Position numbers and translations under genes: made by a program. 64,000 nucleotides of DNA, taken from positions 248,001 to 312,000 of IMG/VR virus record IMGVR_UViG_3300024262_006558. One strand, 5' to 3'. Under the pieces are notes generated by a model that was not told the origin of the DNA, searched no databases, and saw nothing but the letters and a program-made list of their open reading frames with translations. Of the stretch, positions 23,242-55,232 are shown one piece after another (positions within the stretch are counted from its first letter, which is position 1; every line of letters starts with the position of its first letter).

Positions 23242-23448
23242 ATGAAAAAAGAAATCTTGTTTGAACTTAATCGCTTTGGTGATAGAAAATATTATCTTGA
23301 TGATGAACTCCATAGAGAAGATGGCCCAGCCGTTGAATATTCTAATGGAGATAAAGAGTGGCGCCTGAATGGTAAAGAATTAACCGAAGAAGAGTTTAAT
23401 AAGAAGATAACCGAATTGAATGTGTCTAAAATACACGAGCTATGGTAA
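23242..23448 (+). CDS. HREDGPA-repeat protein, array gene 1 (1 unit)
   Basis: 22-aa WxLNGKxHRxDGPA repeat (MORN-variant-like) plus tail ELTEEEFNKKITELNVSKIHELW. Confidence 0.8.
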   Translation: MKKEILFELNRFGDRKYYLDDELHREDGPAVEYSNGDKEWRLNGKELTEEEFNKKITELNVSKIHELW

Positions 23449-23855
23449 AGCAAGAACCTATATGTAAAACAACTGCCTATGGAGATAAGCATTGGTATCT
23501 CAATGGAAAGCAACATCGTGAAGATGGTCCAGCCGTTGAATGGGCTGATGGAACTAAATTCTGGTACCTCAATGGAAAACGCCATAGAGAAGATGGCCCA
23601 GCCGTTGAATATGCATATGGAACTAAAGCTTGGTGGATTAATGGAGAACTACATAGATTAGGAGGACCATCAGTCACTGATGAAGATGGTAAGTTCTGGT
23701 ACCTCAATGGAAAACGCCATAGAGAAGATGGTCCAGCCGTTGAATATAACGATGGAACTAAAGAATGGTTTCTTAATGGTAAAAAATTAACCGAAGAAGA
23801 GTTTAATAAGAAGATAACCGAATTGAATGTGTCTAAAATACATGAGCTATGGTAG
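23442..23855 (+). CDS. HREDGPA-repeat protein, array gene 2 (4 units)
   Basis: Same repeat and tail; 7-nt overlap with gene 1. Confidence 0.85.
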   Translation: MVKQEPICKTTAYGDKHWYLNGKQHREDGPAVEWADGTKFWYLNGKRHREDGPAVEYAYGTKAWWINGELHRLGGPSVTDEDGKFWYLNGKRHREDGPAVEYNDGTKEWFLNGKKLTEEEFNKKITELNVSKIHELW

Positions 23856-24127
23856 AACAGGAACCTATATGTAAAACAACTTCCGATGGAACTAAAAACT
23901 GGTTTCTGAATGGAAAGCATCATCGTGAAGATGGGCCAGCCGTTGAATATACTAATGGAGATAATCACTGGTTCCTTCATGGAAAACGCCATAGAGAAGA
24001 TGGTCCAGCTGTTGAATTAGCAGGTGGATATAAATATTGGTTCCTTCATGGTAAAGAATTAACCGAAGAAGAATTTAATAAGAAGATAACCGAATTGAAT
24101 GTGTCTAAAATACATGAGCTATGGTAG
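23849..24127 (+). CDS. HREDGPA-repeat protein, array gene 3 (2 units)
   Basis: MVEQEPICKTT head, IHELW tail. Confidence 0.85.
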   Translation: MVEQEPICKTTSDGTKNWFLNGKHHREDGPAVEYTNGDNHWFLHGKRHREDGPAVELAGGYKYWFLHGKELTEEEFNKKITELNVSKIHELW

Positions 24128-24399
24128 AACAGGAACCTATATGTAAAACAACTTCCGATGGAGATAAATGTTGGTACCTGAATGGAAAAAGGCATAGAGA
24201 AGATGGTCCAGCTATTGAATATGCCGATGGAGACAAAGAATGGTGCCTGAATGGAAAACGCCATAGAGAAGATGGTCCAGCTGTTGAATTAGCAGGTGGA
24301 TATAAATATTGGTTCCTTCATGGTAAAGAATTAACCAAAAAAGAGTTTAATAAAAAGATCTCCGAATTGAATGTGTCTAAAATACACGAGCTATGGTAG
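24121..24399 (+). CDS. HREDGPA-repeat protein, array gene 4 (2 units)
   Basis: Same head, repeat and tail. Confidence 0.85.
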   Translation: MVEQEPICKTTSDGDKCWYLNGKRHREDGPAIEYADGDKEWCLNGKRHREDGPAVELAGGYKYWFLHGKELTKKEFNKKISELNVSKIHELW

Positions 24400-24671
24400 A
24401 ACAGGAACCTATATGTAAAACAACTGCCGATGGAGATAAGCATTGGTATCTGAATGGAAAGCATCATCGTGAAGATGGTCCAGCTATTGAAAGGGTTAAT
24501 GGATCTAAATACTGGTATCTGAATGGAAAGCATCATCGTGAAGATGGTCCAGCTATTGAATATGCCAATGGAGATAAATACTGGTTTCTCAATGGTAAAG
24601 AATTAACCGAAGAAGAATTTAATAAGAAGATAACCGAATTGAATGTGTCTAAAATACACGAGCTATGGTAG
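24393..24671 (+). CDS. HREDGPA-repeat protein, array gene 5 (2 units)
   Basis: Same head, repeat and tail. Confidence 0.85.
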   Translation: MVEQEPICKTTADGDKHWYLNGKHHREDGPAIERVNGSKYWYLNGKHHREDGPAIEYANGDKYWFLNGKELTEEEFNKKITELNVSKIHELW

Positions 24672-25009
24672 AACAGGAACCTATATGTAGATTATTTCCA
24701 GATGGAACTAAACAATGGTACCTAAATAGAAAGCTTCATCGTGAAGATGGGCCAGCCGTTGAATATACTAATGGAGATAAATGTTGGTTTATTAATGATA
24801 AACTTCATAGATTAGATGGCCCAGCTGTGGAGTCTATTGGAGATAAGCAATGGTGTTTAAATGGAAAAAGACATCGTGAAGATGGCCCAGCTGTTGAATG
24901 TTCTGATGGAGATAAATTTTGGTTTCTTAATGGTAAAAAATTAACCGAAGAAAAATACAATGAAGAGATCGCTAAATTGAATGCATCTAAAATACATGAG
25001 TTATGGTAG
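24665..25009 (+). CDS. HREDGPA-repeat protein, array gene 6 (3 units)
   Basis: Same head, repeat and tail. Confidence 0.85.
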   Translation: MVEQEPICRLFPDGTKQWYLNRKLHREDGPAVEYTNGDKCWFINDKLHRLDGPAVESIGDKQWCLNGKRHREDGPAVECSDGDKFWFLNGKKLTEEKYNEEIAKLNASKIHELW

Positions 25010-25488
25010 AACAAGAACCTATATGTAAAACATGTTCCAATGGAGATAAAGAATGGTATCTCAATGGAAAACTACATAGAGTAGATGAGCCAGCTATTGA
25101 ATCTGCCAATGGACATAAACTATGGTATCTCAATGGAAAGCAACATCGTGAAGATGGTCCAGCTTGTGAATATGCCAATGGAGATAAATCTTGGTACCTG
25201 AATGGAGAAAGGCATAGAGAAGATGGTCCAGCTATTGAATCTGCCAATGGAGATAAATCTTGGTTCCTTCATGGAAAACGCCATAGAGAAGATGGTCCAG
25301 CTATTGAATCTGCCAATGGACATAAACTATGGTATCTCAATGGAAAAAGGCATAGAGTAGATGGTCCAGCCTGTGAATGGAGCAATGGAGACAAAGAATG
25401 GTTCCTTCATGGGAAAGAGTTAAGCGAAGAAGAATTTAATAAGAAGATCTCCGAATTGAATGCATCTAAAATACACGAGCTATGGTAA
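25003..25488 (+). CDS. HREDGPA-repeat protein, array gene 7 (5 units)
   Basis: Same head, repeat and tail. Confidence 0.85.
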   Translation: MVEQEPICKTCSNGDKEWYLNGKLHRVDEPAIESANGHKLWYLNGKQHREDGPACEYANGDKSWYLNGERHREDGPAIESANGDKSWFLHGKRHREDGPAIESANGHKLWYLNGKRHRVDGPACEWSNGDKEWFLHGKELSEEEFNKKISELNASKIHELW

Positions 25489-25567
25489 AAAGCTGAAAAG
25501 TTAACTTTCCTAAAAAGTACATAATTTCCCTGATGTTGTATATATTGGTGAATTTAGAATATAGATT

Positions 25568-25864
25568 ATGAAAAAAAGATATACATTAGCAAAGCAGGCA
25601 AAAGTTGGAGAGACATGCACATGTCCAAGTTGCGGCACTCAGTTCGAGAAAACCAATTACCAACAAGCTTTCTGTAAATCTAAAGGCGGAACTATATGTA
25701 AAGATAAGTATTGGAATACAGTAACTCCAAACAAAAGAAATAACACTACAAGAATTTCGCCAGCGTCAGCAAGATGGATGGCTCAACAAGCCCAGGAAAG
25801 AGAAGACTTTGACCCTTATGACATGGAGCATCCATTTAGCTCGGAAGCTCTGGGACAATGGTAA
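25568..25864 (+). CDS. Cys-rich (zinc-binding) hypothetical protein
   Basis: CTCPSC...C...C; last + strand gene, preceded by a 36-bp repeat. Confidence 0.75.
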   Translation: MKKRYTLAKQAKVGETCTCPSCGTQFEKTNYQQAFCKSKGGTICKDKYWNTVTPNKRNNTTRISPASARWMAQQAQEREDFDPYDMEHPFSSEALGQW

Positions 25865-26972
25865 ACAAAAACTTCGGAATCACTACCATTCAACGCCTAG
25901 CGCTTAGCGGACGTAGATTCTAAGCTGGGCATGTGAATGATGTAGCGAAGCGGAATCATTCACGTAACGCGTAGCGTTACTTTGATTAATTATGCCCAGG
26001 CAATAACCGACCAGGTCGGTAATCTTTTTAACTCATCATATAATTAAATGTACGACATGGTATGTCGTACATTTAATAGAGCAGCAACATTATAATTTGC
26101 AACCCAATCTCTGAGAATTTCCGCAAGTTCGTAAACCTAACCCCTTAGCTATGTTAATGAATTTATGCCTGCGGGAATGTGGAGGAATTTTTGCTGGTTT
26201 GTAACAAAGCAGAAAAATGACGACACAAGACTAAAGGCATAAAGAAAAGACATAGCAGCTTGGTCCTGATCTGGATCAGGACAATAACTAGACCTATAAA
26301 AAACTCTTAGCAGCACTCCCATCTTTTTATATTTGTTATCCTCGATAACAAATAGCATTATCCCGACTAGGTCGGGTTTAAATAAACTTCCTAAGAGAAA
26401 GCAACGCTTTCGAAGAATACCTACACTGACCCTCTGAAAATTTCCGCAAACTCGTAAACGATTAACCCGCCACAATCCCCCACTTACCCCCACCCTACTC
26501 TCTGAAAATTTCCGCAAACTCGTAAACGATAAAACATACCAGTAACAACCAACGTTTCTCGTAGAATTTCCGCACTTTCGTAAACGCTATGCAGACACAA
26601 CTCTACATATAAATTTTTTACTTAAAAATAAAGTACATAATATCCCCAACAAAATAGAGATTATTTCGTTTATTAAGTATAGGGAGTTTGGACAAGAACA
26701 GACGCCGCCTTTTAACACGAGAACAAAGGCGGATCCAATAAACAAAAAAGGAGCTTGTCCCCTACCCTATTAAAACATTATGTATACACGCCCAACCGCA
26801 TACCCGCTTACGCGATTATACGGACAGGATTATACAGCCTAAAAAAAAAATTCTCATTATTGTAAATTATAAGTTTGATTATTGTCGCATTTAATCACAC
26901 TTGACTAGGAGTTAACGCAGTGAGAAAAAATTTGGCCCCCTTAATGGAGTGCCGAGCGGCTTCAGTTAGAGA

Positions 26973-26988
26973 TGTTCCACGTGGAACA
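26973..26988. promoter_or_regulatory. parS: parS centromere-like site
   Basis: TGTTCCACGTGGAACA, inside a perfect 24-bp palindrome at 26969-26992, in a long non-coding region. Confidence 0.8.
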
Positions 26989-28181
26989 TCTCGCTAAAGT
27001 CTAAGAATTTTAAAGTTTCCACTTTGGAAACCTGGGTTTTAAAGTTTTTTCGTTGGTTGAAAAACCATGAGGATTTCTGGTGGAAAATCTTGGGCAAATT
27101 GAGTCGCTTTTCTAGAACGCCCCCAGCCCACAAAATGTACTTTTACTCTCCTTCCCTCCAAAAAAACCAATTTTACCTCTTAAAAACCTTTTTTACACCA
27201 AACATACCGCCTAAGTCTCCCCCTAATATAAGCCATTCTAAGCCCCTATAATCTCCCTATTAATACATCATTAATAAGTCTTAAAAACCTCTCTAAAAAC
27301 CTCTTATATATGCACCTATTAACACGTCTATATACTGGGTTAAATCGGGTTAAAAAGTACTCTATTTCTTCATGTGAATAACCTACTCTTTTTACACACA
27401 TATTCACACATATTTTTACATACTTCCTCTCCCTAATTTGGACCTCTCCCTGTGTGGTAAAAAGCGATCAGATTTAGGGCATAAAACCGATGTTAAAAAA
27501 GGGGTTTTGGCGACCCCTTTTTACCATAGAATAACTACCATAATTAATGGCGTAAAAACCTCTAATAACCCTATCCTTTTACTGGGTGTGAAAACGCTCA
27601 AATCACACCTCTCCCTGCCCTATATAATACACCACAATAAACAGCCTATTAATAAGTCATTTTAAGCTCTTCTAAGCGACTCGATTATACATCTGGGGTA
27701 ATGAGTTATTATCTACATAAAAACGTTATTATACATGCTTATATCTAACCTCTCCCTATTCGTAGATTTAAGTCATATACAATTTTGTTGGGGTTTATTT
27801 GTAAGTAATATTTTTTATTAATATTTATTCATGTAACCCTTAATCAGAGGGGGGTTTAGGAAGCTTCAACATAGTTGAATGAAGACTACACTTTTAAACT
27901 ACGTTCCTCAATAGCACGGGTACTAATTACGAAGCATCTCTATAATACTTGGAGGTTCAATGCTAAGTCTGTTTCTATTTTTTCCAAAGGGGGTTGTTGA
28001 TGGGGCAGAGCCTAAACTCAATCGTACTGACTTGACTGACAGCAAGACGAAGGTTAATAAAACAATTCTCAAATCTCTTTCTAACGAAGGGGGTTTGGGG
28101 GTTGTTGTTTAAGACCTACCTCTTCTCACCAGCCTTACTTCCAGCAAATAATTTACTGTCTACAATAGGCATGTATATTAC

Positions 28182-28886
28182 TTATATAGTTCTCCTAGTA
28201 ATTTTGTAGTCTAGTTCACCTCTAAGTTTCTTCTGTTGGAATTCTTGTCTCTTCAAGTAATCTAATATAAAATCCTTAGTAGGGTCTGAAACATATCCTT
28301 CATTAACTAGACGCCAAGGAGATTGGTTATGTACATTTCTTATATACATATCCGCTCCAGCATCGAGTAGAGCTTTAATCATATCCAGTGAAGCTCTTCG
28401 TTCTAGCGCGGCATACAATACGGTCCAGGAAGATGGTGTTGATTGGTAGTTAGGATCTACTCCTAATTCCAACAACAGCTTTAGAGCTTTGGGGGAATTC
28501 TGAGTTGCGGCTTGTACAATTGGAGGGGCCCATTGTTTAGCAATACACCTATGTATATCTACTCCTATTCCGTGTAGGTATTTGATACAATCTACCGAAT
28601 CATAAACGGAGCATATTATAATTAAGCTTCTACTATCTTTGTCTAATTCATCTCTATGAATAGCTCCTACGTATATTAGTTTTTTAAGCGCTAGTGGTTT
28701 ATCGTCTCTAATACATTGTACAGCTATCTCCATAAAATCTATATCTGTTTTGAAGTCTTTGAAGAATTCATTGGACAGGAACTGGAAAGATAGATAGTAG
28801 TCTGACCAATTTATTTGGTCGGCATGTTCTATGAGCCACTCTTCTGTTTTTATAAAATTTCTTTGAGGTATTTCACTTAAGTACAT
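28182..28886 (-). CDS. ankyrin-repeat protein with N-terminal Trp module
   Basis: TEEWLIEHADQINW head; PPIVQAATQNSPKALKLLLELGVDPN. Confidence 0.85.
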   Translation of the reverse strand: MYLSEIPQRNFIKTEEWLIEHADQINWSDYYLSFQFLSNEFFKDFKTDIDFMEIAVQCIRDDKPLALKKLIYVGAIHRDELDKDSRSLIIICSVYDSVDCIKYLHGIGVDIHRCIAKQWAPPIVQAATQNSPKALKLLLELGVDPNYQSTPSSWTVLYAALERRASLDMIKALLDAGADMYIRNVHNQSPWRLVNEGYVSDPTKDFILDYLKRQEFQQKKLRGELDYKITRRTI

Positions 28887-29563
28887 AAAACTTTTTCTTT
28901 AAATTCTTCTTCTCTATGCCTTTCTCCATTCAGATACCAAGATTTATCTCCATTGGCACATTCAATAGCTGGACCATCTTCACGATGTTTTTCTCCATTC
29001 AGATACCAAGATTTATCTCCATTGGCACATTCAATAGCTGGACCATCTTCACGATGTTTTTCTCCATTCAGATACCAAGATTTAGATCCATTGGCATATT
29101 CAACGGCTGGACCATCTACTCTATGTCTTTCTCCATTCAGATACCATTCTTTTTGTCCATCGGCATATTCAACGGCTGGACCATCTACTCTATGTCTTTC
29201 TCCATTCAGATACCAATATTTAGATCCATCGGCATATTCAATGGCTGGACCATCTACTCTATGTCTTTCTCCATTGAGATACCAATATTTAGATCCATCG
29301 CTCCATTCAACGGCGGGTCCATCTTCTCTATGCCTTTCTCCATTAAAAAACCAATACTTATCTCCATCGGCATGTTCAATAGCTGGACCATCTTCTCTAT
29401 GCCTTTTTCCATTCAGGTACCAGTTAGTTATTTCATACTTAAACATATCTCCGAATTCTTTGGAGAAGATATCGGAATGGTATTCGAATTTATCCCAATC
29501 AATAGAGTCGGCATGTTCAATGCACCACTTTTCTCCTTTATCTATGTAATCATTGGCGATCAT
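28877..29563 (-). CDS. Trp module + HREDGPA repeats (7 full units)
   Basis: GEKWCIEHADSIDWDKF head, then 22-aa repeats. Confidence 0.85.
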   Translation of the reverse strand: MIANDYIDKGEKWCIEHADSIDWDKFEYHSDIFSKEFGDMFKYEITNWYLNGKRHREDGPAIEHADGDKYWFFNGERHREDGPAVEWSDGSKYWYLNGERHRVDGPAIEYADGSKYWYLNGERHRVDGPAVEYADGQKEWYLNGERHRVDGPAVEYANGSKSWYLNGEKHREDGPAIECANGDKSWYLNGEKHREDGPAIECANGDKSWYLNGERHREEEFKEKVLCT

Positions 29564-30215
29564 TGTATTTTTTTTCGGTTAATTCTTTTCCATTGAGATA
29601 CCATGATTTATCTCCATCGGCATATTCAATAGCTGGACCATCTTCTCTATGCCTTTTTCCATTGAGATACCATGATTTATCTCCATCGGCATATTCAATA
29701 GCTGGACCATCTTCTCTATGTAGATTTCCATTGAAATACCACTCTTTATGTCCATTGGCCCATTCAACGGCTGGCCCATCTAATCTATGCCTTTCTCCAT
29801 TAATCCACCATTCTTTATGTCCATTGGCAGATTCAATAGCTGGACCATCTTCACGATGATGCTTTCCATTCAGAAACCATTCTTTATATCCATTGACATA
29901 TTCAATAGCTGGTCCATCTAATCTATGCCTTTCTCCATTAATCCACCATTCTTTATGTCCATTGGCATATTCACAAGCTGGACCATCTACTCTATGCCTT
30001 TTTCCATTCAGGTACCATTCTTTGTCTCCATTGACTAATTCAACAGCTGGACCATTTTCTCTATGTAGTTCTCCTTTGGAGTTTTTCCATACAAACCTTA
30101 TAATTTCATATTTAAAGGTTTCAAAGAAATCTTTAGAGTAATAATTCATATCGCATTGGAATGAGTTCCAGTCGAATGAGTCGGCGTGCTTTATGATATA
30201 TTCTTCTGTTTGCAT
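29550..30215 (-). CDS. Trp module + HREDGPA repeats (7 units)
   Basis: TEEYIIKHADSFDW head. Confidence 0.85.
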   Translation of the reverse strand: MQTEEYIIKHADSFDWNSFQCDMNYYSKDFFETFKYEIIRFVWKNSKGELHRENGPAVELVNGDKEWYLNGKRHRVDGPACEYANGHKEWWINGERHRLDGPAIEYVNGYKEWFLNGKHHREDGPAIESANGHKEWWINGERHRLDGPAVEWANGHKEWYFNGNLHREDGPAIEYADGDKSWYLNGKRHREDGPAIEYADGDKSWYLNGKELTEKKYNDRQ

Positions 30216-30841
30216 TGAGTTCTTTGTTTAAAGTCTTCTTCGGTTACTCGTTTACCATTGAGATACCAGTGTTTAGATCCATTGTATTTAATTACAGCTG
30301 GTCCATCTTCTCTATGAAGTTCATCATTGATATACCAAAAATTATCTCCATTGGCATATTCACAGGCTGGACCATCTTCTCTATGTAGTTTTCCATTCAG
30401 GTACCAAAAATTATCTCCATTGGATTTAATTACAGCTGGCTCATCTACTCTATGCCTTTTCCCATTCAGATACCATTCTTTGTCTCCATCGCTCCATTCA
30501 CAGGCTGGACCATCTACTCTATGCCTTTTCCCATTCAGATACCATTCTTTGTCTCCATCGGCATATTCACAGGCTGGACCATCTACTCTATGCCTTTTTC
30601 CATTAATAAACCAATGCTTATCTCCATCGGCATATTCAATAGCTGGCCCATCTACCCTATGACATTTACCATTCAGATACCAATGTTTAATTTCACTTTT
30701 AAACTGTACAGCAAAGTCTGTTGAGAACTTATCTGCATGGTATTCGAATTTATCCCAATCAATCTTATCGGCATTATTAATACACCATTCTTCTCCTAGT
30801 ATAGTATAGTCTTCTGCATTAATATTATCCTGTGTATTCAT
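30191..30841 (-). CDS. Trp module + HREDGPA repeats (6 units)
   Basis: GEEWCINNADKIDW head. Confidence 0.85.
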   Translation of the reverse strand: MNTQDNINAEDYTILGEEWCINNADKIDWDKFEYHADKFSTDFAVQFKSEIKHWYLNGKCHRVDGPAIEYADGDKHWFINGKRHRVDGPACEYADGDKEWYLNGKRHRVDGPACEWSDGDKEWYLNGKRHRVDEPAVIKSNGDNFWYLNGKLHREDGPACEYANGDNFWYINDELHREDGPAVIKYNGSKHWYLNGKRVTEEDFKQRTQCKQKNIS

Positions 30842-30886
30842 TATATTCTCTATAGTAGTTGAAGTGTTATTCTCCTATGTAATATA

Positions 30887-31648
30887 TTAATTATCTATAG
30901 TTGAAGTTGTGTTTTCTAATTGGGGTTCTCCATGAATGTGCCAACGTTTATGTCCATCGACATATTCAACAGATGGACCATCTTCACGATGTCTTTTTCC
31001 ATTTAGCCACCAGGATTTAGTTCCATTGGCAGATTCAATGGCTGGACCATCTACTCTATGTCTTTCTCCATTGAGATACCAAGCTTTATCTCCATCGGCA
31101 TATTCAATGGCTGGACCATCTACTCTATGTCTTTCTCCATTGAGATACCAGTGATTATCTCCATTAGTATATTCAACGGCTGGCCCATCTTCACGATGTT
31201 TTTCTCCATTCAGATACCAAGCTTTATGTCCATCGCTCCATTCAACGGCGGGTCCATCTTCACGATGTTTTTCTCCATTCAGATACCAAGCTTTATCTCC
31301 ATCAGAACATTCAACGGCGGGTCCATCTAATCTATGCCTTTCTCCATTAAGAAACCATTCTTTATATCCATTGGCCCATTCAACGGCTGGCCCATCTTCT
31401 CTATGTCTTTCTCCATTCAGATACCATTCTTCATCTCCATCGCTCCATTCAACGGCGGGTCCATCTTCTCTATGAAGCTTTCCATTCAGATACCAGTTAG
31501 TTATTTCATATCTAAACATTTCACCGAATTCTTTGGAGAAGATATCGGCATGATATTCAAATACATCCCAATCAATATTATCTGCATTAGCGATACACCA
31601 TTTTTCTCCTTTAGTTATATGGAAATTGTTTTCTAAGTTAATAGCCAT
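30887..31648 (-). CDS. Trp module + HREDGPA repeats (8 units)
   Basis: GEKWCIANADNIDW head. Confidence 0.85.
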   Translation of the reverse strand: MAINLENNFHITKGEKWCIANADNIDWDVFEYHADIFSKEFGEMFRYEITNWYLNGKLHREDGPAVEWSDGDEEWYLNGERHREDGPAVEWANGYKEWFLNGERHRLDGPAVECSDGDKAWYLNGEKHREDGPAVEWSDGHKAWYLNGEKHREDGPAVEYTNGDNHWYLNGERHRVDGPAIEYADGDKAWYLNGERHRVDGPAIESANGTKSWWLNGKRHREDGPSVEYVDGHKRWHIHGEPQLENTTSTIDN

Positions 31649-31651
31649 AAT

Positions 31652-32374
31652 CTATTTTGTATTTTCTATATCATCTAGATTATCTATGGTTACGGTTATT
31701 TCTCTAAAGACTCTTTTGTTACTATAGTTAGTTTCTCTGGTTTCCAGTATTCTAGCGCTTGGATATTTACTGGTTAGTAATTTAGAAAGTGCTTCGAAGT
31801 TTTTATCTGATGCTATTGTTTGGTTATCATCATTAAAAGACAGGCCGACTTTTTCCAGGTCTACTTTCTTTTCTTCTATGGTCTTACCTTTATCTCTATA
31901 CGGATCGCATAGCATACCTGAAAGGGTAAGGTTTATTCTACCTGATTGTCCAATGGAGAATTCCTTTATATGTCCTAGTCCTTCTAAGTTCCACCACATC
32001 CAGATATCATCATAGATATTCTTTATTCTTTCTCTAGCGTCTTCGTTGGTTACTTTGTTGCCCAGTTGTTTTCTAAGATCCCTGTTCTCGATGTTCAGGG
32101 ATCTTATCTCTGAGTATCGTTCTTTATTTTGTTGGTCTAGTACCCCTTCATAACCTAAAGTCTTCTGTAATTCTAGAACATAGTGTTCCGAAAGGGATAA
32201 CTGAGTTGCTTTCATTCCTTCAGTAAGTTTACCCGCTTTCAGTTGAGAGTGAAGATGTCCTATGTTAAATTTAATGTCATTATAGGATTTCTCTATAGCT
32301 TTTAGAAGATCTCCTTTGGGATCTTCTACAAGCGTTGTGTCTTCTTTATCAAATGTTAATTGTCTATCTTTCAT
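31652..32374 (-). CDS. hypothetical coiled-coil phage protein
   Basis: ORF track. Confidence 0.75.
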   Translation of the reverse strand: MKDRQLTFDKEDTTLVEDPKGDLLKAIEKSYNDIKFNIGHLHSQLKAGKLTEGMKATQLSLSEHYVLELQKTLGYEGVLDQQNKERYSEIRSLNIENRDLRKQLGNKVTNEDARERIKNIYDDIWMWWNLEGLGHIKEFSIGQSGRINLTLSGMLCDPYRDKGKTIEEKKVDLEKVGLSFNDDNQTIASDKNFEALSKLLTSKYPSARILETRETNYSNKRVFREITVTIDNLDDIENTK

Positions 32375-32894
32375 TATATTTTTCTTCGGTTAATTGTTTA
32401 CCATTCAGATACCACTCTTTATTTCCATCGGCATTTTCAATAGCTGGACCATCTAATCTATGCCTTTCTCCGTTGAGATACCAATATTTAGATCCATTGG
32501 CAGATTCAACAGCTGGGCCATCTAATCTATGACATTTACCATTGATATACCAATATTTAGATCCATCGTTCCATTCAATAGCTGGCTCATCTACTCTATG
32601 CTTCTTTCCATTCAGGTACCAGTATTTATCTCCATTGTCCAATTCCATAGCTGGGCCATCTAATCTATGACATTTACCATTGATATACCAGTATTTAGAT
32701 CCATTGTCAGATTCAATAGCTGGACCATCTACTCTATGGAATTTACCATCTGGGTTTTTACAAACATAAACTAGTATTTCATCTTTAAAGTCATCGGCAA
32801 ATTCCTTTGAATAGGTATTCATATCGCATTGGAATGAGTCCCAATCGAAAGAGTCGGCGTGCTTTATGATATATTCTTCTGAATACTTTTCCAT
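32364..32894 (-). CDS. Trp module + HREDGPA repeats (5 units)
   Basis: SEEYIIKHADSFDW head. Confidence 0.85.
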   Translation of the reverse strand: MEKYSEEYIIKHADSFDWDSFQCDMNTYSKEFADDFKDEILVYVCKNPDGKFHRVDGPAIESDNGSKYWYINGKCHRLDGPAMELDNGDKYWYLNGKKHRVDEPAIEWNDGSKYWYINGKCHRLDGPAVESANGSKYWYLNGERHRLDGPAIENADGNKEWYLNGKQLTEEKYNER

Positions 32895-34637: not shown

Positions 34638-36044
34638 TTACCATTTGTCTTTAGTAAAGTACTTTTTTAATGAGTCATATATGTATATAGACGCTTCTCC
34701 TGTAGATCCTGTTTCATAAGATCCTCTATAACTATAATCTATCAAACTACTAGACACAGTTTGAACCATTTTTGTAATTGGCGTTGGAATTAGTGGTATA
34801 TCCATTCCATATTTATTAAGAGCTTTAATGAAGAAATTTCGAGCTATTACTGATGCTACCAAATATTTTGTAGAGTGGCTTAGTTCCGCGCATTTATCTA
34901 AAGCTTTTTCAATAGTAATGTGTGATCTCTTACTAGGATTAGCTCCGTGTTTCATCAGAACTTTAAAAGAATCTTGACAATCTTGCATAATAGAACAAAT
35001 AATAGCTGTCACTTTTTTCTTGTTAAGAAAATTCATATTTGCTCCAAAGTTTGCTAAGATTTCCAATTTTTCTACATCACCTTTCATTACACATTCATGC
35101 ACTAATCTGTTACCATTACTAACAAAAGAGTTTGGGTTAGCTCCGTTTTTCATGAACAACACTAGCACTCTCTTATCGCTATGATCGATAGCTTCTTCTA
35201 TAAACCTATTAGCATTTGACCCTTTCTTCAATAAAGACTCCATCTTTTTAAGAACTTTAACTCTAGTGTTTTTCTCTTCTTTATCATTTAACAAAGTGAT
35301 TGAGTTTATTATATTGGATGGATCAGTTTTCAACAAATAAGATAGAATTATGTCAGGGTCAATCCCCATTTCTATTAATAAATCAAATTTACTCTCTTTA
35401 TTTTCAAAAGTTTCTTGAAGGTAATCTCTTATATATAGATCTGTGTTGGAAAAACATTTAGATAATAAAATCATCTTCTCATCAAAATCATCTCTTTTAA
35501 AGAGATGATCATGTTTCCAATAATAAAAAATAAATGAAGATTTTAAACTTTCACTTGTTATTTGAGAGATTAATGCTTTAAAAACATTAATTTCCTGACA
35601 GAATATTTCATATAAAATATCATTGTCAGTAACCAGTTGTAATGATATAAAAGAAAACGTTCCAAGTTTACTTAATGCTTTCTCCACATAATTAAATTTT
35701 CTTTTAACTAATAAGAAAATTAAAAATTTAGACCCAAAACTTTTAAGTTTACTGTCGTCAACTACTATACTTTCAACTTTTTGTATAATCTTATTTAGTA
35801 TGTAGTTAAATACTATATCTAATTTTTTGTCATCTTTATTATCTATACAGTGAAGAAGTACTTCAAGAGCTTCATCTAATGTAAGATTTGTAGGTTCAGC
35901 TGAAAATTCAAAGAAGTATTTAAATAAGAAAGGTTTAGGAAGTTTAAATCTTTCTTTTTCGCTCATAGACTCAATATCAATGAATTCCATGTATTCATTG
36001 GCTATTTCTTCGCTGTATGGTAGTTTAAGGTTTATAGTAGCCAT
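34638..36044 (-). CDS. ankyrin-repeat protein with LPYSEE-type head
   Basis: GNRLVHECVMKGDVEKLEILANFGANMN. Confidence 0.8.
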   Translation of the reverse strand: MATINLKLPYSEEIANEYMEFIDIESMSEKERFKLPKPFLFKYFFEFSAEPTNLTLDEALEVLLHCIDNKDDKKLDIVFNYILNKIIQKVESIVVDDSKLKSFGSKFLIFLLVKRKFNYVEKALSKLGTFSFISLQLVTDNDILYEIFCQEINVFKALISQITSESLKSSFIFYYWKHDHLFKRDDFDEKMILLSKCFSNTDLYIRDYLQETFENKESKFDLLIEMGIDPDIILSYLLKTDPSNIINSITLLNDKEEKNTRVKVLKKMESLLKKGSNANRFIEEAIDHSDKRVLVLFMKNGANPNSFVSNGNRLVHECVMKGDVEKLEILANFGANMNFLNKKKVTAIICSIMQDCQDSFKVLMKHGANPSKRSHITIEKALDKCAELSHSTKYLVASVIARNFFIKALNKYGMDIPLIPTPITKMVQTVSSSLIDYSYRGSYETGSTGEASIYIYDSLKKYFTKDKW

Positions 36045-37831: not shown

Positions 37832-38481
37832 TTATTATAGTCTTGATCTTTAGATTCTGAAGCTCCAGCTCCAGGAACAGCCCCTAAGTTAAGCAAATAT
37901 TCTTTTACTATTGTGTAAGGGTTAGCGTTATCATAAAGATAGTTTAATTCATTGTTATATAGATAATCTAATGGAGTCCAACCTTTATGACATTTATCAT
38001 TAATATTAGCACCAGCTTCAATAAGATAGCGATGTATATTATCTTCTATATGAGATTGCTCCAAAGAAATCATCAATGGAGATTTACCTGTTGATATACC
38101 TTTTGAGTTTGGATCCGCTCCGCATTGTATAAGCATGTCTAAGGAGTTTTTGAGACCGTGGTATGCGGCAGCACATAATGAAGGAGTTATTGTATTAAGA
38201 GGCTTCTTTCTTAGCCAATACCTAACATAATTAATATCCATTATAGTGCTTAGAGTATTTATCAAATGGATTTTTTCATTATGTATAGCCCATGAAAATA
38301 ATACACCTAAATTTAGTTCATTTTTAAAGTCATTTAAAAACTCAGCATCAAAACCAGATATCTCTTCAAAATATTCATACCATTCTTCTATTTGATCCGC
38401 ATTTTGCACAAACCATTCCTGTCCTGAAGATCTTCTACGAATCTTTCTGGATTCATAATTAAAATATCCACTAGCTTCCAT
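37813..38481 (-). CDS. ankyrin-repeat protein with Trp head
   Basis: QEWFVQNADQIEEW; GKSPLMISLEQ...LIEAGANIN. Confidence 0.85.
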   Translation of the reverse strand: MEASGYFNYESRKIRRRSSGQEWFVQNADQIEEWYEYFEEISGFDAEFLNDFKNELNLGVLFSWAIHNEKIHLINTLSTIMDINYVRYWLRKKPLNTITPSLCAAAYHGLKNSLDMLIQCGADPNSKGISTGKSPLMISLEQSHIEDNIHRYLIEAGANINDKCHKGWTPLDYLYNNELNYLYDNANPYTIVKEYLLNLGAVPGAGASESKDQDYNKWEWVG

Positions 38482-39613
38482 ATTCTTGTAGTAGTTCTGT
38501 GAGCTCGTAATTACGTTTACTTCTAGCATATTCTACTAACTTTAAACCATTAATAGTTCCTTTATTAGGATCAACTCCTAGCTTTAACATATCTTCAACA
38601 ACTTTTAGGTTGTTGTCGCAAATTGCTCTTTGTAGAATTTCACTATTTGAATATGACCCGTTTTTAGATAACATTTTAATTGCTTCTATTGGACCATTTG
38701 TTATTGCATGCTTAGCTAAAGAAATACCTTCATTGTTTTTTTTAGTTAAATCGGCACCTTTATCAATAGCAAATTTGAATAGGTCTAGATTTTTATTGTA
38801 AAGACCTATCCATATAAGTGATTTTTTATCTCTTAATACAGCATCAATTTTCCAAAAACCATTATCAATAATGTATCCTAACAGTTTCATCATATTTTTC
38901 TTTTGATTGTCTGGTACTGGCTTTATCATATTATTAGCGCACCATAAAACAGTTCTTTCAACAACTTTCTTCTCCATACATGAATTAATAAATTCTTCAT
39001 CTATAGAGTTTTTAAGATCATACATATACACCATAGATTTAATTAAAGGAACTGAAGGCGCGGCTTTATATCCTTTTTCTTTTATGAAGAATTTGATCAA
39101 CTCTACAGTTTTTATATATGAAAATCTATCACTATTTGAAATAACAATCGTCATTTGTAAGTTGGTAAGGTTTAAGCGTTTTAATAAACTTATCGCTATA
39201 TTAGATGAAACAACCGACATTACAAACGCTAAAGTAAACTTATCTATTTTTCTGCCTTCTAAAAATTTAACACATGATATTATATCCTCTTGCTTTAAAG
39301 CGTGTTTAAAAGCGTCTCTAACACCACCTACTTCAATTGAGCTATTTTTAAGACTAGCATCCTTAGTCTTTATGTCTAGAATGTTAAATATCATTCTAGC
39401 CGAATTGCCTCTATTATCATTTATGAGAGTAATATATAGCTGGCTAAGCATTTTAAATGTCAATCCAGTCTGATCCGTAATCAGACTGGATAGTAGATCA
39501 TCGGGAAGGGCAGAAATATCTTCACAACTCATTAAAGGAAGCTCAAGGAACTCAAAGAATTCCTTGGCTAACTCATTAGAGTATGGCACTTTTAACGTTA
39601 GGTAATTGGACAT
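38471..39613 (-). CDS. ankyrin-repeat protein with VPYSNE-type head
   Basis: FAIDKGADLTKKNNEGISLAKHAI; MLKLGVDPN. Confidence 0.8.
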   Translation of the reverse strand: MSNYLTLKVPYSNELAKEFFEFLELPLMSCEDISALPDDLLSSLITDQTGLTFKMLSQLYITLINDNRGNSARMIFNILDIKTKDASLKNSSIEVGGVRDAFKHALKQEDIISCVKFLEGRKIDKFTLAFVMSVVSSNIAISLLKRLNLTNLQMTIVISNSDRFSYIKTVELIKFFIKEKGYKAAPSVPLIKSMVYMYDLKNSIDEEFINSCMEKKVVERTVLWCANNMIKPVPDNQKKNMMKLLGYIIDNGFWKIDAVLRDKKSLIWIGLYNKNLDLFKFAIDKGADLTKKNNEGISLAKHAITNGPIEAIKMLSKNGSYSNSEILQRAICDNNLKVVEDMLKLGVDPNKGTINGLKLVEYARSKRNYELTELLQEYGS

Positions 39614-47538: not shown

Positions 47539-47672
47539 CGTTCTCGGCAGGACTCGAACCTGCAACCCCCTGTTTGGAAATGTAGAAGGAAGACTTGAAC
47601 ATAGCCAATGGTCTTAGGTAATTGTCATGTCTAAACGATAGACAGGTGCTCTACCAGTTGAGCTACGAGAAC
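47539..47672 (-). tRNA. tRNA-Gly(UCC)-like gene interrupted by a 61-nt insertion in the anticodon loop
   Basis: GTTCTCG/CGAGAAC acceptor, GCTC/GAGC D stem, CCTGT-CT-[61 nt, 47579-47639]-TCC-AA-ACAGG, GCAGG-TTCGAGT-CCTGC. Confidence 0.75.
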
Positions 47673-50657: not shown

Positions 50658-52466
50658 TTAAAATGGTAAATCTTCTTCATCATCACCTCGATCTACCATG
50701 TCAGTGAAAAAAGGTTCTACATGCTCTTTTGGTTCATAGGCCTCAAAAGCATACAAAACTTGTTGAACTGGCCTGTGTAAACCTAAAGATTTCTCTTCTT
50801 TTTTGTATATGGAAATTGGAGCAGAATCTAATATTTTATTTATATCACTAACAACTTCTATGGGAGGGTTTATATTTGAATAACCTCTAAACTGTTTATA
50901 TTTAAAGAAGTTATTACCTTCACTATTTAACCCAACTCCCACTTCTAAAGTCCACCCTTTTTTATGAATTTCAACTTCTTCTTTACATAATTTTTCTAGG
51001 AGTATATCATCTTTCAATTTTATATGAAATATAGCACTTTGACCTGAATTAATAACATTAGAATATGATGTTACACAATGCTTCATTTTAGTCCCTTCTA
51101 ACACTAAACGATCTACATCATCTACCAATTCTATGTCGTACTTATCTGTAGATTGAATAACTCGGTACCAAGATTTAGATTTAATTTCACCTAATTCTTT
51201 CTTTTTATAAACAATAGAAACATTATCATGTTCTTGCTTTAACCTCTTTGGTGACTTGATCTTTAAATTAATCTTCATGCCTAATTCATAAGACATCCTT
51301 ACATAGTCTTTAACTAAATAATCTTGGTCTTCTAATCCTGGTATTAAATGATTATATAATTTTCTAAAAAAGATCATGTTATATGATGTATTTGTAAAAA
51401 TCAAATCATTACAAGCTGCTCTTTTTATTGCAGGAACATCAAGCGGTTGATTCTTATCAACTATAGGACTTCCTCCAATTGTAAGTCTATTTTTTCTCTG
51501 TTCATCATTTTTATATAGTATATGATTGGATAATAATCCGTATGATTTAATCTCTTCTAAGCTCATAATAGAAGTAAGAGAATCTACAAAGCTTTTTATC
51601 TTGTTTTCTTGATTATGTATGAACTGAGTTACTTTATTCAATTCATCTGGCTCTACAATATAAGCAATAATTAAAGCTAGGTCTGTGTTACACATTCCTA
51701 ATAGCTTCTTAGGAATGTTAACCTCATTTCCATTAACTTTTTTTAGTAGTTCAGCCATAGTTTTTGTGTTTTTAATTAATTTATTGGGTATTGGCTTATT
51801 GTATAAGCTTTTCATTAAAACGCTTGCAACTGGGCCTCCACTATAAATGTCGAGCAACTCTCCAAATAAATCACCTTTATTAGTTAATCCAGTTTTACTA
51901 CAAATTGTTTCATGATTCTTGAGAGATAGATATTGAGTTCTATAAGTACATCTCTGCTTATAGTTTTTCATTTTAAACCTAACTAAAGTAGAATCATTTT
52001 TCATATTAAATACAACTCTACCTTGCCACACTTTATCTAAAAAGTAATGCTCCGTTTTATTGTTATATCCAGTATAATGATACCACTCTTGGTATTGAAA
52101 CTTTTCCTCTCTTAAATCATATCTCAAGATCTTTTCCTCAAAAAAAGATCTTGAGATACTTGATTCACCATCAAACTTATTTTTGTTTAATATAGCTTTT
52201 TCTGAATTAAACCAATTATTTTCCCAATGTTCAAGTATCCAATACTCCCATCGATCTGTTTTTATATACTTGATTTTTTCAACATAACTATTTTCAGTTC
52301 TAAAGTCTTCATAATCACTTATACCAGTAGTGAACTTGTTAGATAAACAAGTTCTATTAAATATATCTAAAACAAGCCTTTTCTTACCAGTTTCTTTAGA
52401 AAATATTTTTCTGATATCATTGACATCAGATATTTCGATCTTATCTTCAGTATGTTCTTGAATCAT
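50658..52466 (-). CDS. PcfJ-like domain protein
   Basis: C-terminal LKQEHD...LVLEGTKMKHCVTSY...AIFHI...TLEV. Confidence 0.8.
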   Translation of the reverse strand: MIQEHTEDKIEISDVNDIRKIFSKETGKKRLVLDIFNRTCLSNKFTTGISDYEDFRTENSYVEKIKYIKTDRWEYWILEHWENNWFNSEKAILNKNKFDGESSISRSFFEEKILRYDLREEKFQYQEWYHYTGYNNKTEHYFLDKVWQGRVVFNMKNDSTLVRFKMKNYKQRCTYRTQYLSLKNHETICSKTGLTNKGDLFGELLDIYSGGPVASVLMKSLYNKPIPNKLIKNTKTMAELLKKVNGNEVNIPKKLLGMCNTDLALIIAYIVEPDELNKVTQFIHNQENKIKSFVDSLTSIMSLEEIKSYGLLSNHILYKNDEQRKNRLTIGGSPIVDKNQPLDVPAIKRAACNDLIFTNTSYNMIFFRKLYNHLIPGLEDQDYLVKDYVRMSYELGMKINLKIKSPKRLKQEHDNVSIVYKKKELGEIKSKSWYRVIQSTDKYDIELVDDVDRLVLEGTKMKHCVTSYSNVINSGQSAIFHIKLKDDILLEKLCKEEVEIHKKGWTLEVGVGLNSEGNNFFKYKQFRGYSNINPPIEVVSDINKILDSAPISIYKKEEKSLGLHRPVQQVLYAFEAYEPKEHVEPFFTDMVDRGDDEEDLPF

Positions 52467-53470
52467 GTTAAAATATCTATGATAAGCTTTATAAGTCCAG
52501 TTAGAATGCCTATACAGGCCCACAGTTTGTATAATCGTTTAATATAGTCTACTTTTTCGTCCTTTATGGTATCATCAAATTTAAAAATTAAACCCCCCAT
52601 AAAAGTATACAATAAAGCTCCTACAACTTTAACTGCAAAGAAAGTAATTAATAAATCATTAAATTTGGTACCATATATAAAATAGACCATTGAACTTACA
52701 ACGGATGGAATTGCAATACAATAACATAAAAACATTATTCCTGTAACTTTCCAGAATCTTTTTACATTTATATTATTATTGTTTTCTAATATTTCATAAT
52801 TTTCGGCAATTATTCTTTCATTTTCTTCCTCTATTTCCCTGCACTCTCTTGCTTGTGTTACTAGTTCTTCAGCTATTCTAGCCTCAAATTCTTGCATTAT
52901 TTCATACGTAGGAACATCCAATAAGCCTGAGAAGTCACCTTCAATCATTTTAGTTAATGTAATATTTCCTCCGTTCTTAGCATTTTTATAAACTATATTC
53001 ATCATGGAGCTAACATACTTATTGCCATAAATGGTTTTAATAATAACTAAAGCTTTAAACACTACCGAGCTGAACTCTTTTTTTGTGGAATTAAAACTTA
53101 TAAAATGTTCAATATCTTCAAGTATTAAACGATTTTTATTCCCTTTTTCTCTAAAGCATCTCAATGACTCCATCATTAAAGTGATCCCGCCTTTATCATA
53201 AGGATGGTTCATAAAATAATCACTTAAATAAGAAATTATTTTTTTATTTGCAATCCTTTCTTCATAAACTACTTGTTTCACTAATTCCAATGGAGCATTA
53301 AATAATATCCTAATGTCAAATTGTTCCCAATCTATAATGTCAAAATAGTCTTCTATAACATTATCTGTAATAGGTAAATTTACTTTAATGAATTCAGGTT
53401 CAGATTTTGGATTTTTATAATATACTTTTCTCGAATACATGTCTTGTGTTATTGATATTACATCCATCAT
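52463..53470 (-). CDS. Trp head + C-terminal membrane segments
   Basis: NLPITDNVIEDYFDIIDW; 3 hydrophobic helices at the C-terminus. Confidence 0.7.
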   Translation of the reverse strand: MMDVISITQDMYSRKVYYKNPKSEPEFIKVNLPITDNVIEDYFDIIDWEQFDIRILFNAPLELVKQVVYEERIANKKIISYLSDYFMNHPYDKGGITLMMESLRCFREKGNKNRLILEDIEHFISFNSTKKEFSSVVFKALVIIKTIYGNKYVSSMMNIVYKNAKNGGNITLTKMIEGDFSGLLDVPTYEIMQEFEARIAEELVTQARECREIEEENERIIAENYEILENNNNINVKRFWKVTGIMFLCYCIAIPSVVSSMVYFIYGTKFNDLLITFFAVKVVGALLYTFMGGLIFKFDDTIKDEKVDYIKRLYKLWACIGILTGLIKLIIDILT

Positions 53471-54345
53471 ATAGGCCAAGTTAAAATGAATGATATAATA
53501 TATAAAAACACATTAGATACTAAATTTGTAATAAAATCTATTCTATCATTATCCTCTATATTAAATTTTCTTTTTCTATAATAATCTTCATAGCAAAGAG
53601 CGCCGCAACCTACAAACTGAACTATGAAAAACAATTTCAAAGACATGTTTTCAGAAATTGGAGTATTAGACCAAGCATTAAGTGTAAAGAAAAAAAACAA
53701 GGGGACAATTACAGCATAAACAGAAAATGAAACCATAAAATGGTTAAGGTAGATGTTTTCTAAATGTTTTGAATTTTCTCTAACATTTAATTGAAGCATC
53801 TTTTTATGTTCAGAAATTCTACCTTCTTTAGTTTTCAAATTAGGATTTAAATTTTCAACATACCTCACTAATTCCCTATTATTGCTTCTAGTCGCTTCTT
53901 TGTGTATCTCAAACAAATACAATTTCTTTTTACCCTCATCTGGGTGTGAGTTCATTAAATCAGCTAATGCTGTAGATAATAAATTGAAGCTATCATCAGA
54001 GTAACCACCAACTCTCTTATAGAAATCTCTAAGTGAATATATAATTTTGTACATCCTTTTTGGGTGATCTCTTGCATCAGACATCAAACCTCTTAAAACT
54101 TCAGCACTTTTCTTATCCAACTCTGCTCGATCTTCAACATGATTCAAGAAAGTGTCAAAAATACGTATAACCATAAGACCATCCATGTCGGTGGTGTGCC
54201 TTGTTATCTTTCGTATTTTAGAAGCTTCATATGTAAGAAACCAAGAATAATCAAACGTTCTCCAATTGATAATGTCCATATATTCTATGACATTATCCTG
54301 GCTAGGATCAATTTGAACATCTAACAATTGTTTTTTAGTTGTCAT
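53467..54345 (-). CDS. Trp head + C-terminal membrane segments
   Basis: PSQDNVIEYMDIINW; hydrophobic C-terminus. Confidence 0.7.
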   Translation of the reverse strand: MTTKKQLLDVQIDPSQDNVIEYMDIINWRTFDYSWFLTYEASKIRKITRHTTDMDGLMVIRIFDTFLNHVEDRAELDKKSAEVLRGLMSDARDHPKRMYKIIYSLRDFYKRVGGYSDDSFNLLSTALADLMNSHPDEGKKKLYLFEIHKEATRSNNRELVRYVENLNPNLKTKEGRISEHKKMLQLNVRENSKHLENIYLNHFMVSFSVYAVIVPLFFFFTLNAWSNTPISENMSLKLFFIVQFVGCGALCYEDYYRKRKFNIEDNDRIDFITNLVSNVFLYIISFILTWPI

Positions 54346-54348
54346 TTC

Positions 54349-54711: not shown

Positions 54712-54783
54712 ATTAATTTTCTAATCTAACAATTTCTTTAGCTAACGTAATTAAGTTACCATATGTTTCATTCCAAGCTCCCA

Positions 54784-55221: not shown

Positions 55222-55232
55222 TTTATTTTTGT

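What the first reader, a model, noticed from the sequence alone, without database searches (positions are those of the whole stretch)
26969..26992. Perfect chromosomal-type parS site in a phage-like genome
Seen: TGTTCCACGTGGAACA within the 24-bp perfect palindrome GAGATGTTCCAC|GTGGAACATCTC, intergenic. Established: this is the symmetric form of the bacterial parS consensus (TGTTNCACGTGAAACA) bound by ParB/Spo0J, which also loads SMC. No parA or parB gene is in the window. Inference: the element hijacks the host ParABS/SMC for segregation in a carrier or plasmid state, or titrates host ParB to disturb chromosome segregation.
Basis: partly seen in the sequence, partly recalled or inferred. Interest (0 to 1): 0.72.

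Follow-up and report, generated by a model that had tools for sequence, protein, structure and literature searches.

The report
Orphan host-type parS in huge phage
A roughly 494-kb tailed phage from a subsurface metagenome carries one perfect copy of the bacterial chromosome centromere site parS but no parA or parB gene, and many unrelated phage genomes do the same, which suggests phages use the host's ParB machinery.

Summary
Window 26969-26992 is a perfect 24-bp palindrome, and its 16-bp core is the symmetric parS TGTTCCACGTGGAACA. It is the only such site (up to 2 mismatches) in about 493 of the 494 kb of this phage. About 5e-5 copies are expected by chance.

The same 24-mer occurs in 30 bacterial species genomes. 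In 12-15 of them parA/parB and rsmG/mnmG gene families lie within the 8-kb locus, and in the two loci typed with Pfam the site lies between rsmG and parA. It is therefore a genuine chromosomal-type parS.

The site is not a chimera. Three assemblies carry it in the same context, and the phage's own promoter-like repeats run into the same 2.3-kb gene-free gap.

The "provirus" label is a trimming artefact. The element is a closed ~494-kb myovirus with no ParA, ParB or tyrosine integrase.

Closer relatives, including a complete 519-kb genome, lack parS, so it is a lineage-specific gain. Across IMG/VR, however, the 16-mer occurs in at least 120 contigs against 3 and 12 for two control palindromes. 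It avoids ORFs, and 26 of 28 near-complete carrier genomes lack ParB.

Best reading: an orphan centromere that loads host ParB onto phage DNA. What that achieves (partition, SMC loading or titration) is unproven, and the host is unknown.

The parts
26973..26988 (.). 16-bp parS core TGTTCCACGTGGAACA, the symmetric CC/GG variant of TGTTNCACGTGAAACA
   Evidence: It is the only match in G000 with up to 2 mismatches, and none is found in the remaining ~105 kb of the genome.
26969..26992 (.). 24-bp perfect palindrome that extends the core by GAGA/TCTC
   Evidence: The exact 24-mer occurs in 30 bacterial species genomes. In 12-15 of them parA/parB and rsmG/mnmG families lie in the 8-kb locus, and in the two loci typed with Pfam the site lies between rsmG and parA. 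It occurs in no other IMG/VR contig.
25865..28181 (.). 2.3-kb gap without credible genes between two convergent gene blocks; the local maximum of cumulative GC skew lies at about window 26000
   Evidence: There is no Rfam match above noise.
26106..26591 (+). Four copies of a ~37-nt direct repeat with core AATTTCCGCAAnnTCGTAAAC, an element present 10 times on the + strand of the phage (G000 233-275 kb)
26629..26641 (+). Last of 26 + strand copies of the promoter-like motif AAAGTACATAAT (one mismatch to the searched 13-mer AAAAGTACATAAT), all within G000 231-275 kb; it points towards parS, about 330 nt downstream
   Evidence: The promoter function is inferred.
27015..27031 (+). Terminator-like hairpin with a T-rich tail, 23 nt after the palindrome
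   Evidence: The 26645-27060 + strand folds with z = -4.7.
26749..26763 (-). Terminator-like hairpin with a T run on the - strand, downstream of parS for leftward transcription
25568..25864 (+). Left flanking gene, a 98-aa Cys-rich protein (phrog_8162, function unknown), last gene of the + strand block
28182..28886 (-). Right flanking gene, a 234-aa ankyrin-repeat protein, last gene of the - strand block

Best explanation
The site is a functional orphan centromere. It is a host-type parS that a ~494-kb virulent-looking myovirus acquired in its own lineage and carries without any partition genes.

Proposed mechanism:
- In a host with a canonical ParABS system, host ParB dimers would nucleate on the 16-bp core.
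- They would close as CTP-dependent sliding clamps and spread over the neighbouring phage DNA.
- This would build a partition complex on the phage genome.
- That complex would couple the phage DNA to what ParB normally recruits: ParA (positioning and segregation of copies) and the SMC-ScpAB loader (folding and resolution of a very large replicating genome).

Shown: the sequence identity to working bacterial parS sites, the orphan status, the authenticity of the locus, and a general non-random presence of such sites in phage genomes.

Inferred: binding by the unknown host's ParB and every downstream effect.
For: The site and its genome:
- The core and the 24-bp palindrome are exact, and far beyond chance.
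- The identical 24-mer is found in 30 bacterial species of many phyla. In 12-15 of them, families typed on two loci as mnmG/rsmG, ParA and ParB lie in the 8-kb locus, and in those two loci the site lies between rsmG and parA.
- Five Bacteroidota genomes carry 2-4 clustered perfect sites, all of this CC/GG variant.
- The same 16-mer is the published parS of P. aeruginosa and P. putida (PMC7022226).
- There is one site and no ParA, ParB_N or HTH_ParB in G000 (Pfam) and none by my own ParA/ParB profiles or JGI's annotations in the other ~105 kb; about 493 of 494 kb were examined.
- The locus is native phage DNA. Phage-specific repeat and promoter-like motifs extend into the gap. Three assemblies agree base for base.

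The general pattern in IMG/VR:
- Sites fall inside ORFs in 50% of cases against 76% for random positions, p = 5e-10.
- Only 2 of 28 carrier genomes that are at least 90% complete have a ParB_N gene.
- In a second subclade of related myoviruses (L032, L096) the 16-mer is intact about 230-260 nt upstream of the tail-tube gene, although the flanks have diverged and carry indels.

Precedent:
- SGI1 carries parS mimics and is stabilised by another replicon's ParAB (PMC10954446).
- From established knowledge, a single chromosomal parS stabilises an otherwise unstable plasmid through Soj/Spo0J, and an ectopic parS suffices to load SMC.
Against: - The host is unknown, so no cognate ParB could be examined. 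A search for the phage's CRISPR repeat in 401 Bacteroidota genomes found nothing.
- None of the 27 closer relatives (sheath 39-68% identical, tube 35-88% where the gene is in the locus), including a complete 518,809-bp genome, has a consensus parS. The site is therefore dispensable for this phage type.
- There is a single site, not a cluster.
- It lies at a convergence of transcription and near a GC-skew maximum, the opposite of the origin-proximal, co-directional setting of chromosomal parS.
- A promoter-like motif 330 nt upstream may drive transcription through the site.
- There is no evidence for a carrier or plasmid state. No tyrosine integrase was found, and plasmid-type replication genes were not looked for.
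- No binding test was possible.
Confidence: 0.5

Rival explanations
1. ParB sink or host-takeover decoy. The site's benefit is not to the phage DNA itself. Once the genome replicates to many copies, the sites soak up host ParB-CTP clamps, and with them SMC loading and ParA regulation. That would derange host origin segregation, replication control or division in favour of the infection.
For: - The sequence evidence is the same as for the main reading.
- The site sits at the end of a block of small genes with repeated promoter-like motifs, the typical look of early host-takeover genes.
- SGI1's parS mimics destabilise the replicon whose ParB they bind, in a dose-dependent way (PMC10954446).
- One site per genome is enough if the copy number is high.
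Against: - ParB is non-essential in many bacteria (PMC7022226 table 1), so the gain from titration may be small.
- There is no timing or copy-number information.
- The data cannot separate this from the main reading. Both need ParB binding.
Confidence: 0.15
2. Neutral passenger. A short piece of host DNA, or a chance palindrome, was fixed in a non-essential gap of one lineage and has no role.
For: - It is absent from all closer relatives, including a complete genome.
- It lies in a hypervariable region of repeat-protein paralogs.
- A few of the IMG/VR hits must be chance, since the controls gave 3 and 12.
Against: - The chance expectation is 5e-5 for the core and 3e-7 for the 24-mer.
- No remnant of rsmG, parA or parB flanks it.
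- The excess over controls is at least 10- to 40-fold, the sites avoid ORFs across phages, and the 16-mer is conserved in L032 and L096 within diverged flanks.
Confidence: 0.2
3. The palindrome works in another way: as an RNA hairpin in a ~390-nt non-coding transcript or a bidirectional transcription stop at the convergence point, or as an operator for a phage-encoded helix-turn-helix protein. Its identity to parS would then be coincidental.
For: - A promoter-like motif lies 330 nt upstream and a terminator-like hairpin 23 nt downstream.
- The 26645-27060 + strand folds better than all 100 shuffles, z = -4.7.
- The phage encodes generic HTH proteins, for example a 140-aa double-HTH protein with a marginal HTH_ParB match over 35 residues.
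Against: - The palindrome itself has no U tract.
- There is no Rfam family.
- It cannot explain why exactly this 16-mer recurs in unrelated phages and at bacterial parAB loci.
- The HTH protein lacks the ParB N-terminal CTPase and dimerisation domains.
Confidence: 0.1

Closest known systems
Chromosomal parS of the ParABS system (B. subtilis Spo0J sites; P. aeruginosa and P. putida parS TGTTCCACGTGGAACA)
   Same: The 16-bp sequence is identical. The identical 24-mer is present in 30 bacterial genomes, next to parAB in the loci examined.
   Different: Here there is a single site on a virus genome with no parA or parB. It is not in a cluster and not in an origin-like setting.
SGI1 parS mimics that hijack the IncC plasmid ParABS (PMC10954446)
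   Same: A mobile element without its own ParAB carries centromere copies of another replicon, gains stability and disturbs the owner of the system.
   Different: SGI1 mimics a plasmid parS and is an integrative mobilisable island. Here the mimicked system is the host chromosome's and the carrier is a huge tailed phage. Nothing is shown experimentally.
Partition cassettes of phage-plasmids (P1 parAB-parS, N15 sopAB with dispersed centromeres)
   Same: Phage genomes that carry centromere sites for segregation as episomes.
   Different: Those phages encode their own ParA and ParB and use their own, different parS sequences. This phage encodes neither, and no tyrosine integrase was found.
Test plasmids carrying a chromosomal parS that are stabilised by host Soj/Spo0J (established knowledge; vectors of this kind in PMC4820964)
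   Same: One orphan chromosomal parS on a foreign replicon suffices to engage the host system.
   Different: Those are laboratory constructs. Here the arrangement is natural and on a virus.

Membership tests
Chromosomal-type parS (ParB/Spo0J nucleation site) | 16-bp inverted repeat matching TGTTNCACGTGAAACA or its symmetric variants | tested here: met
   Exact TGTTCCACGTGGAACA at 26973-26988. This variant is listed as the Pseudomonas parS in PMC7022226.
Chromosomal-type parS (ParB/Spo0J nucleation site) | The same sequence is used at bona fide chromosomal centromeres next to parAB | tested here: met
   The exact 24-mer occurs in 30 species genomes. ParB, ParA and rsmG/mnmG families lie in 12-15 of the 8-kb loci, and in the two loci typed with Pfam the site lies between rsmG and parA. 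Clustered sites are seen in 5 Bacteroidota genomes.
Chromosomal-type parS (ParB/Spo0J nucleation site) | Specific binding and CTP-dependent spreading of the resident ParB | not testable with these tools
   The host is unknown. Complex prediction returned no verdict for protein-DNA.
Chromosomal-type parS (ParB/Spo0J nucleation site) | Origin-proximal position, usually several sites | tested here: not met
   There is a single site. It lies about 1 kb from a local cumulative GC-skew maximum, at convergent transcription, and about 164 kb from the skew minimum. The phage origin itself is not known.
Self-contained ParABS partition cassette (plasmid or phage-plasmid type) | parA and parB genes on the same replicon, usually adjacent to parS | tested here: not met
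   No ParB_N, HTH_ParB or AAA_31 at E <= 1 in G000. None was found with my own ParA and ParB profiles in G000 or the extra 96 kb. None appears in JGI's annotations of 388.6-397.1 kb.
Integrated prophage (the record's IMG/VR label) | Host DNA on the flanks and an integrase | tested here: not met
   The trimmed 105 kb has the same GC, skew and gene strand as the phage. The contig end overlaps its start. There is no tyrosine integrase. Serine recombinases were not tested.
Intrinsic (Rho-independent) terminator | GC-rich stem-loop followed directly by a U tract | tested here: not met
   The palindrome is followed by GCTAAAG on the + strand and TAACTGA on the - strand. The scan does not list it, although it lists a separate hairpin at 27015-27031.

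The most novel reading that the evidence does not exclude
Orphan host-type parS sites are a widespread, selected feature of tailed-phage genomes, from ~35-kb phages to ~0.5-Mb huge phages. They would be a general way for viruses without partition genes to load the host's ParB-CTP clamp, and through it ParA and SMC, onto viral DNA, or to drain it from the host chromosome. This phage is one independent acquisition.
Probability: 0.4. Interest if true: 0.8.

Novelty: new variant of a known kind. Interest (0 to 1): 0.62.

Why it matters
ParB-parS is the universal loader of bacterial condensin and the handle for chromosome segregation. If phages routinely carry the host's centromere without the proteins, the ParB-CTP clamp becomes a host factor that viruses exploit or attack. 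That would bear on three things:
- how very large phage genomes are organised or kept in slowly dividing hosts;
- pseudolysogeny and carrier states;
- host prediction, because the parS variant must match the host's ParB.

The idea is directly testable with any cultured phage-host pair that shows the same pattern.

Tried and rejected
- **Giant eukaryotic virus** (suggested by MORN-variant and ankyrin paralogs and an interrupted tRNA): rejected. There was no NCLDV capsid match, though that search had no positive control. Portal, sheath, tube and a tape-measure-like protein are present.
- **Integrated prophage or host chimera:** rejected.
- **Megablast of the locus against GenBank phages:** no match. 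The nearest isolates are only about 31% identical in the sheath.
- **Same-locus conservation:** could not be tested. The only contigs that share the gap are 100% identical copies of the same phage.
- **Rfam, both thresholds:** nothing in the gap.
- **ParB dimer plus phage DNA in complex prediction:** the tool did not fold it, so it is no evidence either way.
- **Host search with the phage's 36-nt CRISPR repeat** in 401 sampled Bacteroidota genomes: no match.
- **Twofold step in Logan word depth near window 26500** (48 against 25): could be inflation by multi-copy MORN k-mers or a real boundary. It was not resolvable.
- **Literature:** six searches found no description of orphan chromosomal parS in lytic or jumbo phages. 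Livny et al. 2007 is not held.

Full report
**The observation.** Window 26969-26992 reads GAGATGTTCCAC|GTGGAACATCTC. It is a perfect palindrome without a spacer, and its central 16 bp are TGTTCCACGTGGAACA. No credible ORF crosses it. JGI's gene calls leave the stretch between the 98-aa gene (25568-25864) and the ankyrin gene (28182-28886) empty apart from one 50-aa call beside the ankyrin gene, about 1 kb from the site. From base composition, 4.7e-5 exact copies are expected in the genome, 3.3e-3 for any TGTTNCACGTGNAACA, and 2.7e-7 for the 24-bp palindrome. Only five spacer-less palindromes with arms of 12 or more exist in 388.6 kb, against 0.075 expected.

**What the genome is.** The window is positions 248001-312000 of a 388,594-bp IMG/VR record labelled 'provirus', from a subsurface metagenome.
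- It is a tailed myovirus with a portal (carrying an HNH insertion), a tape-measure-like protein, ribonucleotide reductase, a tail sheath and a tail tube. There was no NCLDV capsid match.
- The record is simply the first 388,594 bp of the 494,080-bp JGI contig Ga0210003_1000004.
- The same phage was assembled in another sample. In that contig, G032 position x equals contig position x+397,940, and it runs across the contig's end into its start. The map therefore closes at about 494 kb.
- The 'host' flank that was trimmed off has the same GC (0.343), the same negative GC skew and the same gene strand as the neighbouring phage DNA.
- No tyrosine integrase is present. The provirus label is therefore an artefact, and the element is a huge phage.
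- Its nearest cultured relatives are only about 31% identical in the sheath: Microcystis phage Mel-JY01 and Flavobacterium phage immuto, plus an uncultured 484-kb phage.

**Is the site alone, and is a partner encoded?**
- With up to 2 mismatches there is exactly one parS-like site in G000. There is none in contig 388,595-397,109 and none in the remaining 96 kb. Only about 830 bp were not seen.
- Pfam ParB_N, HTH_ParB and AAA_31 find nothing at E <= 1 in G000.
- Profiles I built from the ParA and ParB genes next to bacterial copies of the site find nothing in G000 or in the extra 96 kb. The one exception is a 140-aa protein with two generic helix-turn-helix motifs. Its marginal HTH_ParB score covers 35 residues, and it has no CTPase or dimerisation domain.

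**Is it really a chromosomal parS?**
- The exact 24-mer occurs in 30 species genomes of many phyla: Acidimicrobiia, Bacteroidota, Nitrospirota, Myxococcota, Planctomycetota, Clostridia, Bdellovibrionota, Shewanella, a CPR lineage and others. About 0.002 hits are expected by chance.
- In 12-15 of these 8-kb loci the same three gene families recur. Pfam typing on two of the loci identifies them as MnmG/RsmG, ParA and ParB, and in those two loci the site sits between rsmG and parA.
- Five Bacteroidota genomes among them have 2-4 clustered perfect sites, all of this CC/GG variant.
- The same 16-mer is tabulated as the parS of P. aeruginosa and P. putida (PMC7022226).
- The outer GAGA/TCTC is probably not lineage-specific homology. 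Many bacterial copies sit in even longer palindromes, and flanks outside the 24-mer differ everywhere.

**Is it a chimera?** No.
- An independent Logan contig of 2,437 nt joins the site to the ankyrin and MORN genes. Another of 1,108 nt joins the left part of the gap to the 98-aa gene.
- An ENA MEGAHIT contig of 156,940 bp is identical over window 25682-29342.
- The gap carries the phage's own regulatory repeats. There are 26 + strand copies of AAAAGTACATAAT (one mismatch allowed), all at G000 231-275 kb, the last at window 26629. There are 10 + strand copies of AATTTCCGCAAnnTCGTAAAC, four of them at window 26106-26591.
- MORN-variant paralogs lie on both sides of the gap.

**Anatomy of the locus.**
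- The site lies in a 2.3-kb gene-free gap where a + strand block of small genes (probable early genes, each with the promoter-like motif) meets a long - strand block. The local maximum of cumulative GC skew is at about window 26000.
- A promoter-like motif 330 nt upstream points at the site, and a terminator-like hairpin follows it at 27015-27031. A - strand terminator-like hairpin lies at 26749-26763.
- The 26645-27060 + strand folds unusually well (z = -4.7), but no RNA family matches.
- This setting is unlike the origin-proximal, co-directional context of chromosomal parS.

**Relatives.**
- Twenty-seven IMG/VR contigs with a related sheath (39-68% identity; tube 35-88% where the gene lies in the locus), together about 1.5 Mb and including a complete 518,809-bp genome, have no consensus parS. 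Two-mismatch hits are at background level. In this lineage the site is a recent, dispensable gain.
- Two more distant relatives (L032 and L096; tube 55%, sheath C-terminus about 50%) each carry the perfect 16-mer about 230-260 nt upstream of the tail-tube gene. The surrounding intergenic sequence there has substitutions and indels.
- A weakly related 350-kb contig has one copy directly after a stop codon.

**A general pattern.**
- Two control palindromes of identical composition give 3 hits (sequence read backwards) and 12 hits (half-sites swapped).
- In the fetched flanks only 4 of 120 loci have a weak ParB-like ORF and none has ParA.
- Of 50 larger carrier records, 28 are at least 90% complete, and only 2 of those encode a ParB_N domain.
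- The sites lie inside ORFs of 100 aa or more in 50% of cases, against 76% for random positions in the same loci (p = 5e-10).
- Orphan host-type parS therefore looks like a recurrent, non-random feature of phage genomes. Six literature searches found no description of it. The nearest precedent is SGI1, whose parS mimics bind the IncC plasmid's ParB, stabilise SGI1 and expel the plasmid (PMC10954446).

**Mechanism.** I commit to the reading that the site loads host ParB onto phage DNA (confidence 0.5).
- The steps from binding to CTP-clamp spreading, ParA coupling and SMC loading follow from established ParABS biology and are inferred here.
- Which consequence matters cannot be decided from sequence. 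The candidates are partition or positioning of a non-integrated genome, condensin-assisted handling of a 494-kb replicating DNA, or titration of ParB away from the host origin. Titration is listed as a separate rival (0.15).
- A neutral passenger (0.2) and an RNA or other-protein role (0.1) remain possible.
- The host is unknown. A Bacteroidota host is a weak lead, from the nearest isolates, MORN-variant repeats and the parS variant. The phage's CRISPR repeat was not found in 401 sampled Bacteroidota genomes.

**Verdict.** It gains support from a broader, previously undescribed enrichment of orphan parS in phages. I rate it a new variant of a known kind (centromere mimicry by a mobile element), with interest 0.62.

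Noticed in passing
G000:C1:376291-384400 (outside the window; loci L215, L018): The phage encodes a CRISPR-Cas system of type I-F-variant look: a 740-aa Cas3 with HD and DEAD domains at 380866-383088, a Cas7fv-like protein and Cas6. It also has a 14-repeat array at 377,043-377,945 (36-nt repeat, period 66). One spacer occurs twice.
   Followed up: partly
window 47539-47672 (-): A tRNA gene (Rfam 55.6 bits) has about 61 extra nucleotides in the anticodon loop, so it looks intron-containing. ARAGORN does not call it.
   Followed up: partly
window 23442-25488 (+) and 28877-32894 (-); ankyrin genes at 28182-28886, 34638-36044, 38471-39613: There are large tandem families of MORN-variant repeat proteins (repeat WYLNGKRHREDGPA...) on both sides of the gap, plus several ankyrin-repeat proteins. 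This is unusual cargo for a phage and first suggested a giant eukaryotic virus.
   Followed up: partly
G000 231-275 kb, including window 25513 and 26629: There are 26 + strand copies of AAAAGTACATAAT (one mismatch allowed) and one - strand copy elsewhere. Ten + strand copies of AATTTCCGCAAnnTCGTAAAC also occur, several of them about 25-45 nt upstream of a copy of the first motif. These are probably the early promoters of this phage.
   Followed up: partly
whole record G000 and contig Ga0210003_1000004: The IMG/VR 'provirus' of 388,594 bp is a truncation of a closed ~494-kb phage genome. The 105 kb that were cut away are phage DNA.
   Followed up: yes
window 25354-28937: Logan word depth is 48 for the contig covering 25354-26461 and 25 for the one covering 26501-28937. 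This could be inflation by multi-copy k-mers or a real boundary such as a terminal repeat.
   Followed up: no
L004:12456-16097 (-) = G000 52456-56097: The 1,213-aa portal ORF carries an HNH endonuclease segment at residues ~236-300, upstream of the portal domain.
   Followed up: no
window 26043-26077: A perfect 16-bp-arm hairpin with a 3-nt loop (arms ATTAAATGTACGACAT and its reverse complement) lies in the same gap. Its function is unknown.
   Followed up: no
loci L176, L178, L181, L187, L188, L194, L199, L200: In many bacteria the 24-mer parS sits inside a still longer palindrome, often with A-run and T-run flanks. This suggests that bacterial parS sites often double as hairpin or terminator-like elements.
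   Followed up: no
L037, L110, L117 (IMG/VR contigs): Some phage contigs carry two perfect parS copies. In L037 they are 297 bp apart within a duplicated unit.
   Followed up: no
window 50658-52523 (-): A 621-aa protein has a PcfJ-like domain, a family known from conjugative plasmids.
   Followed up: no
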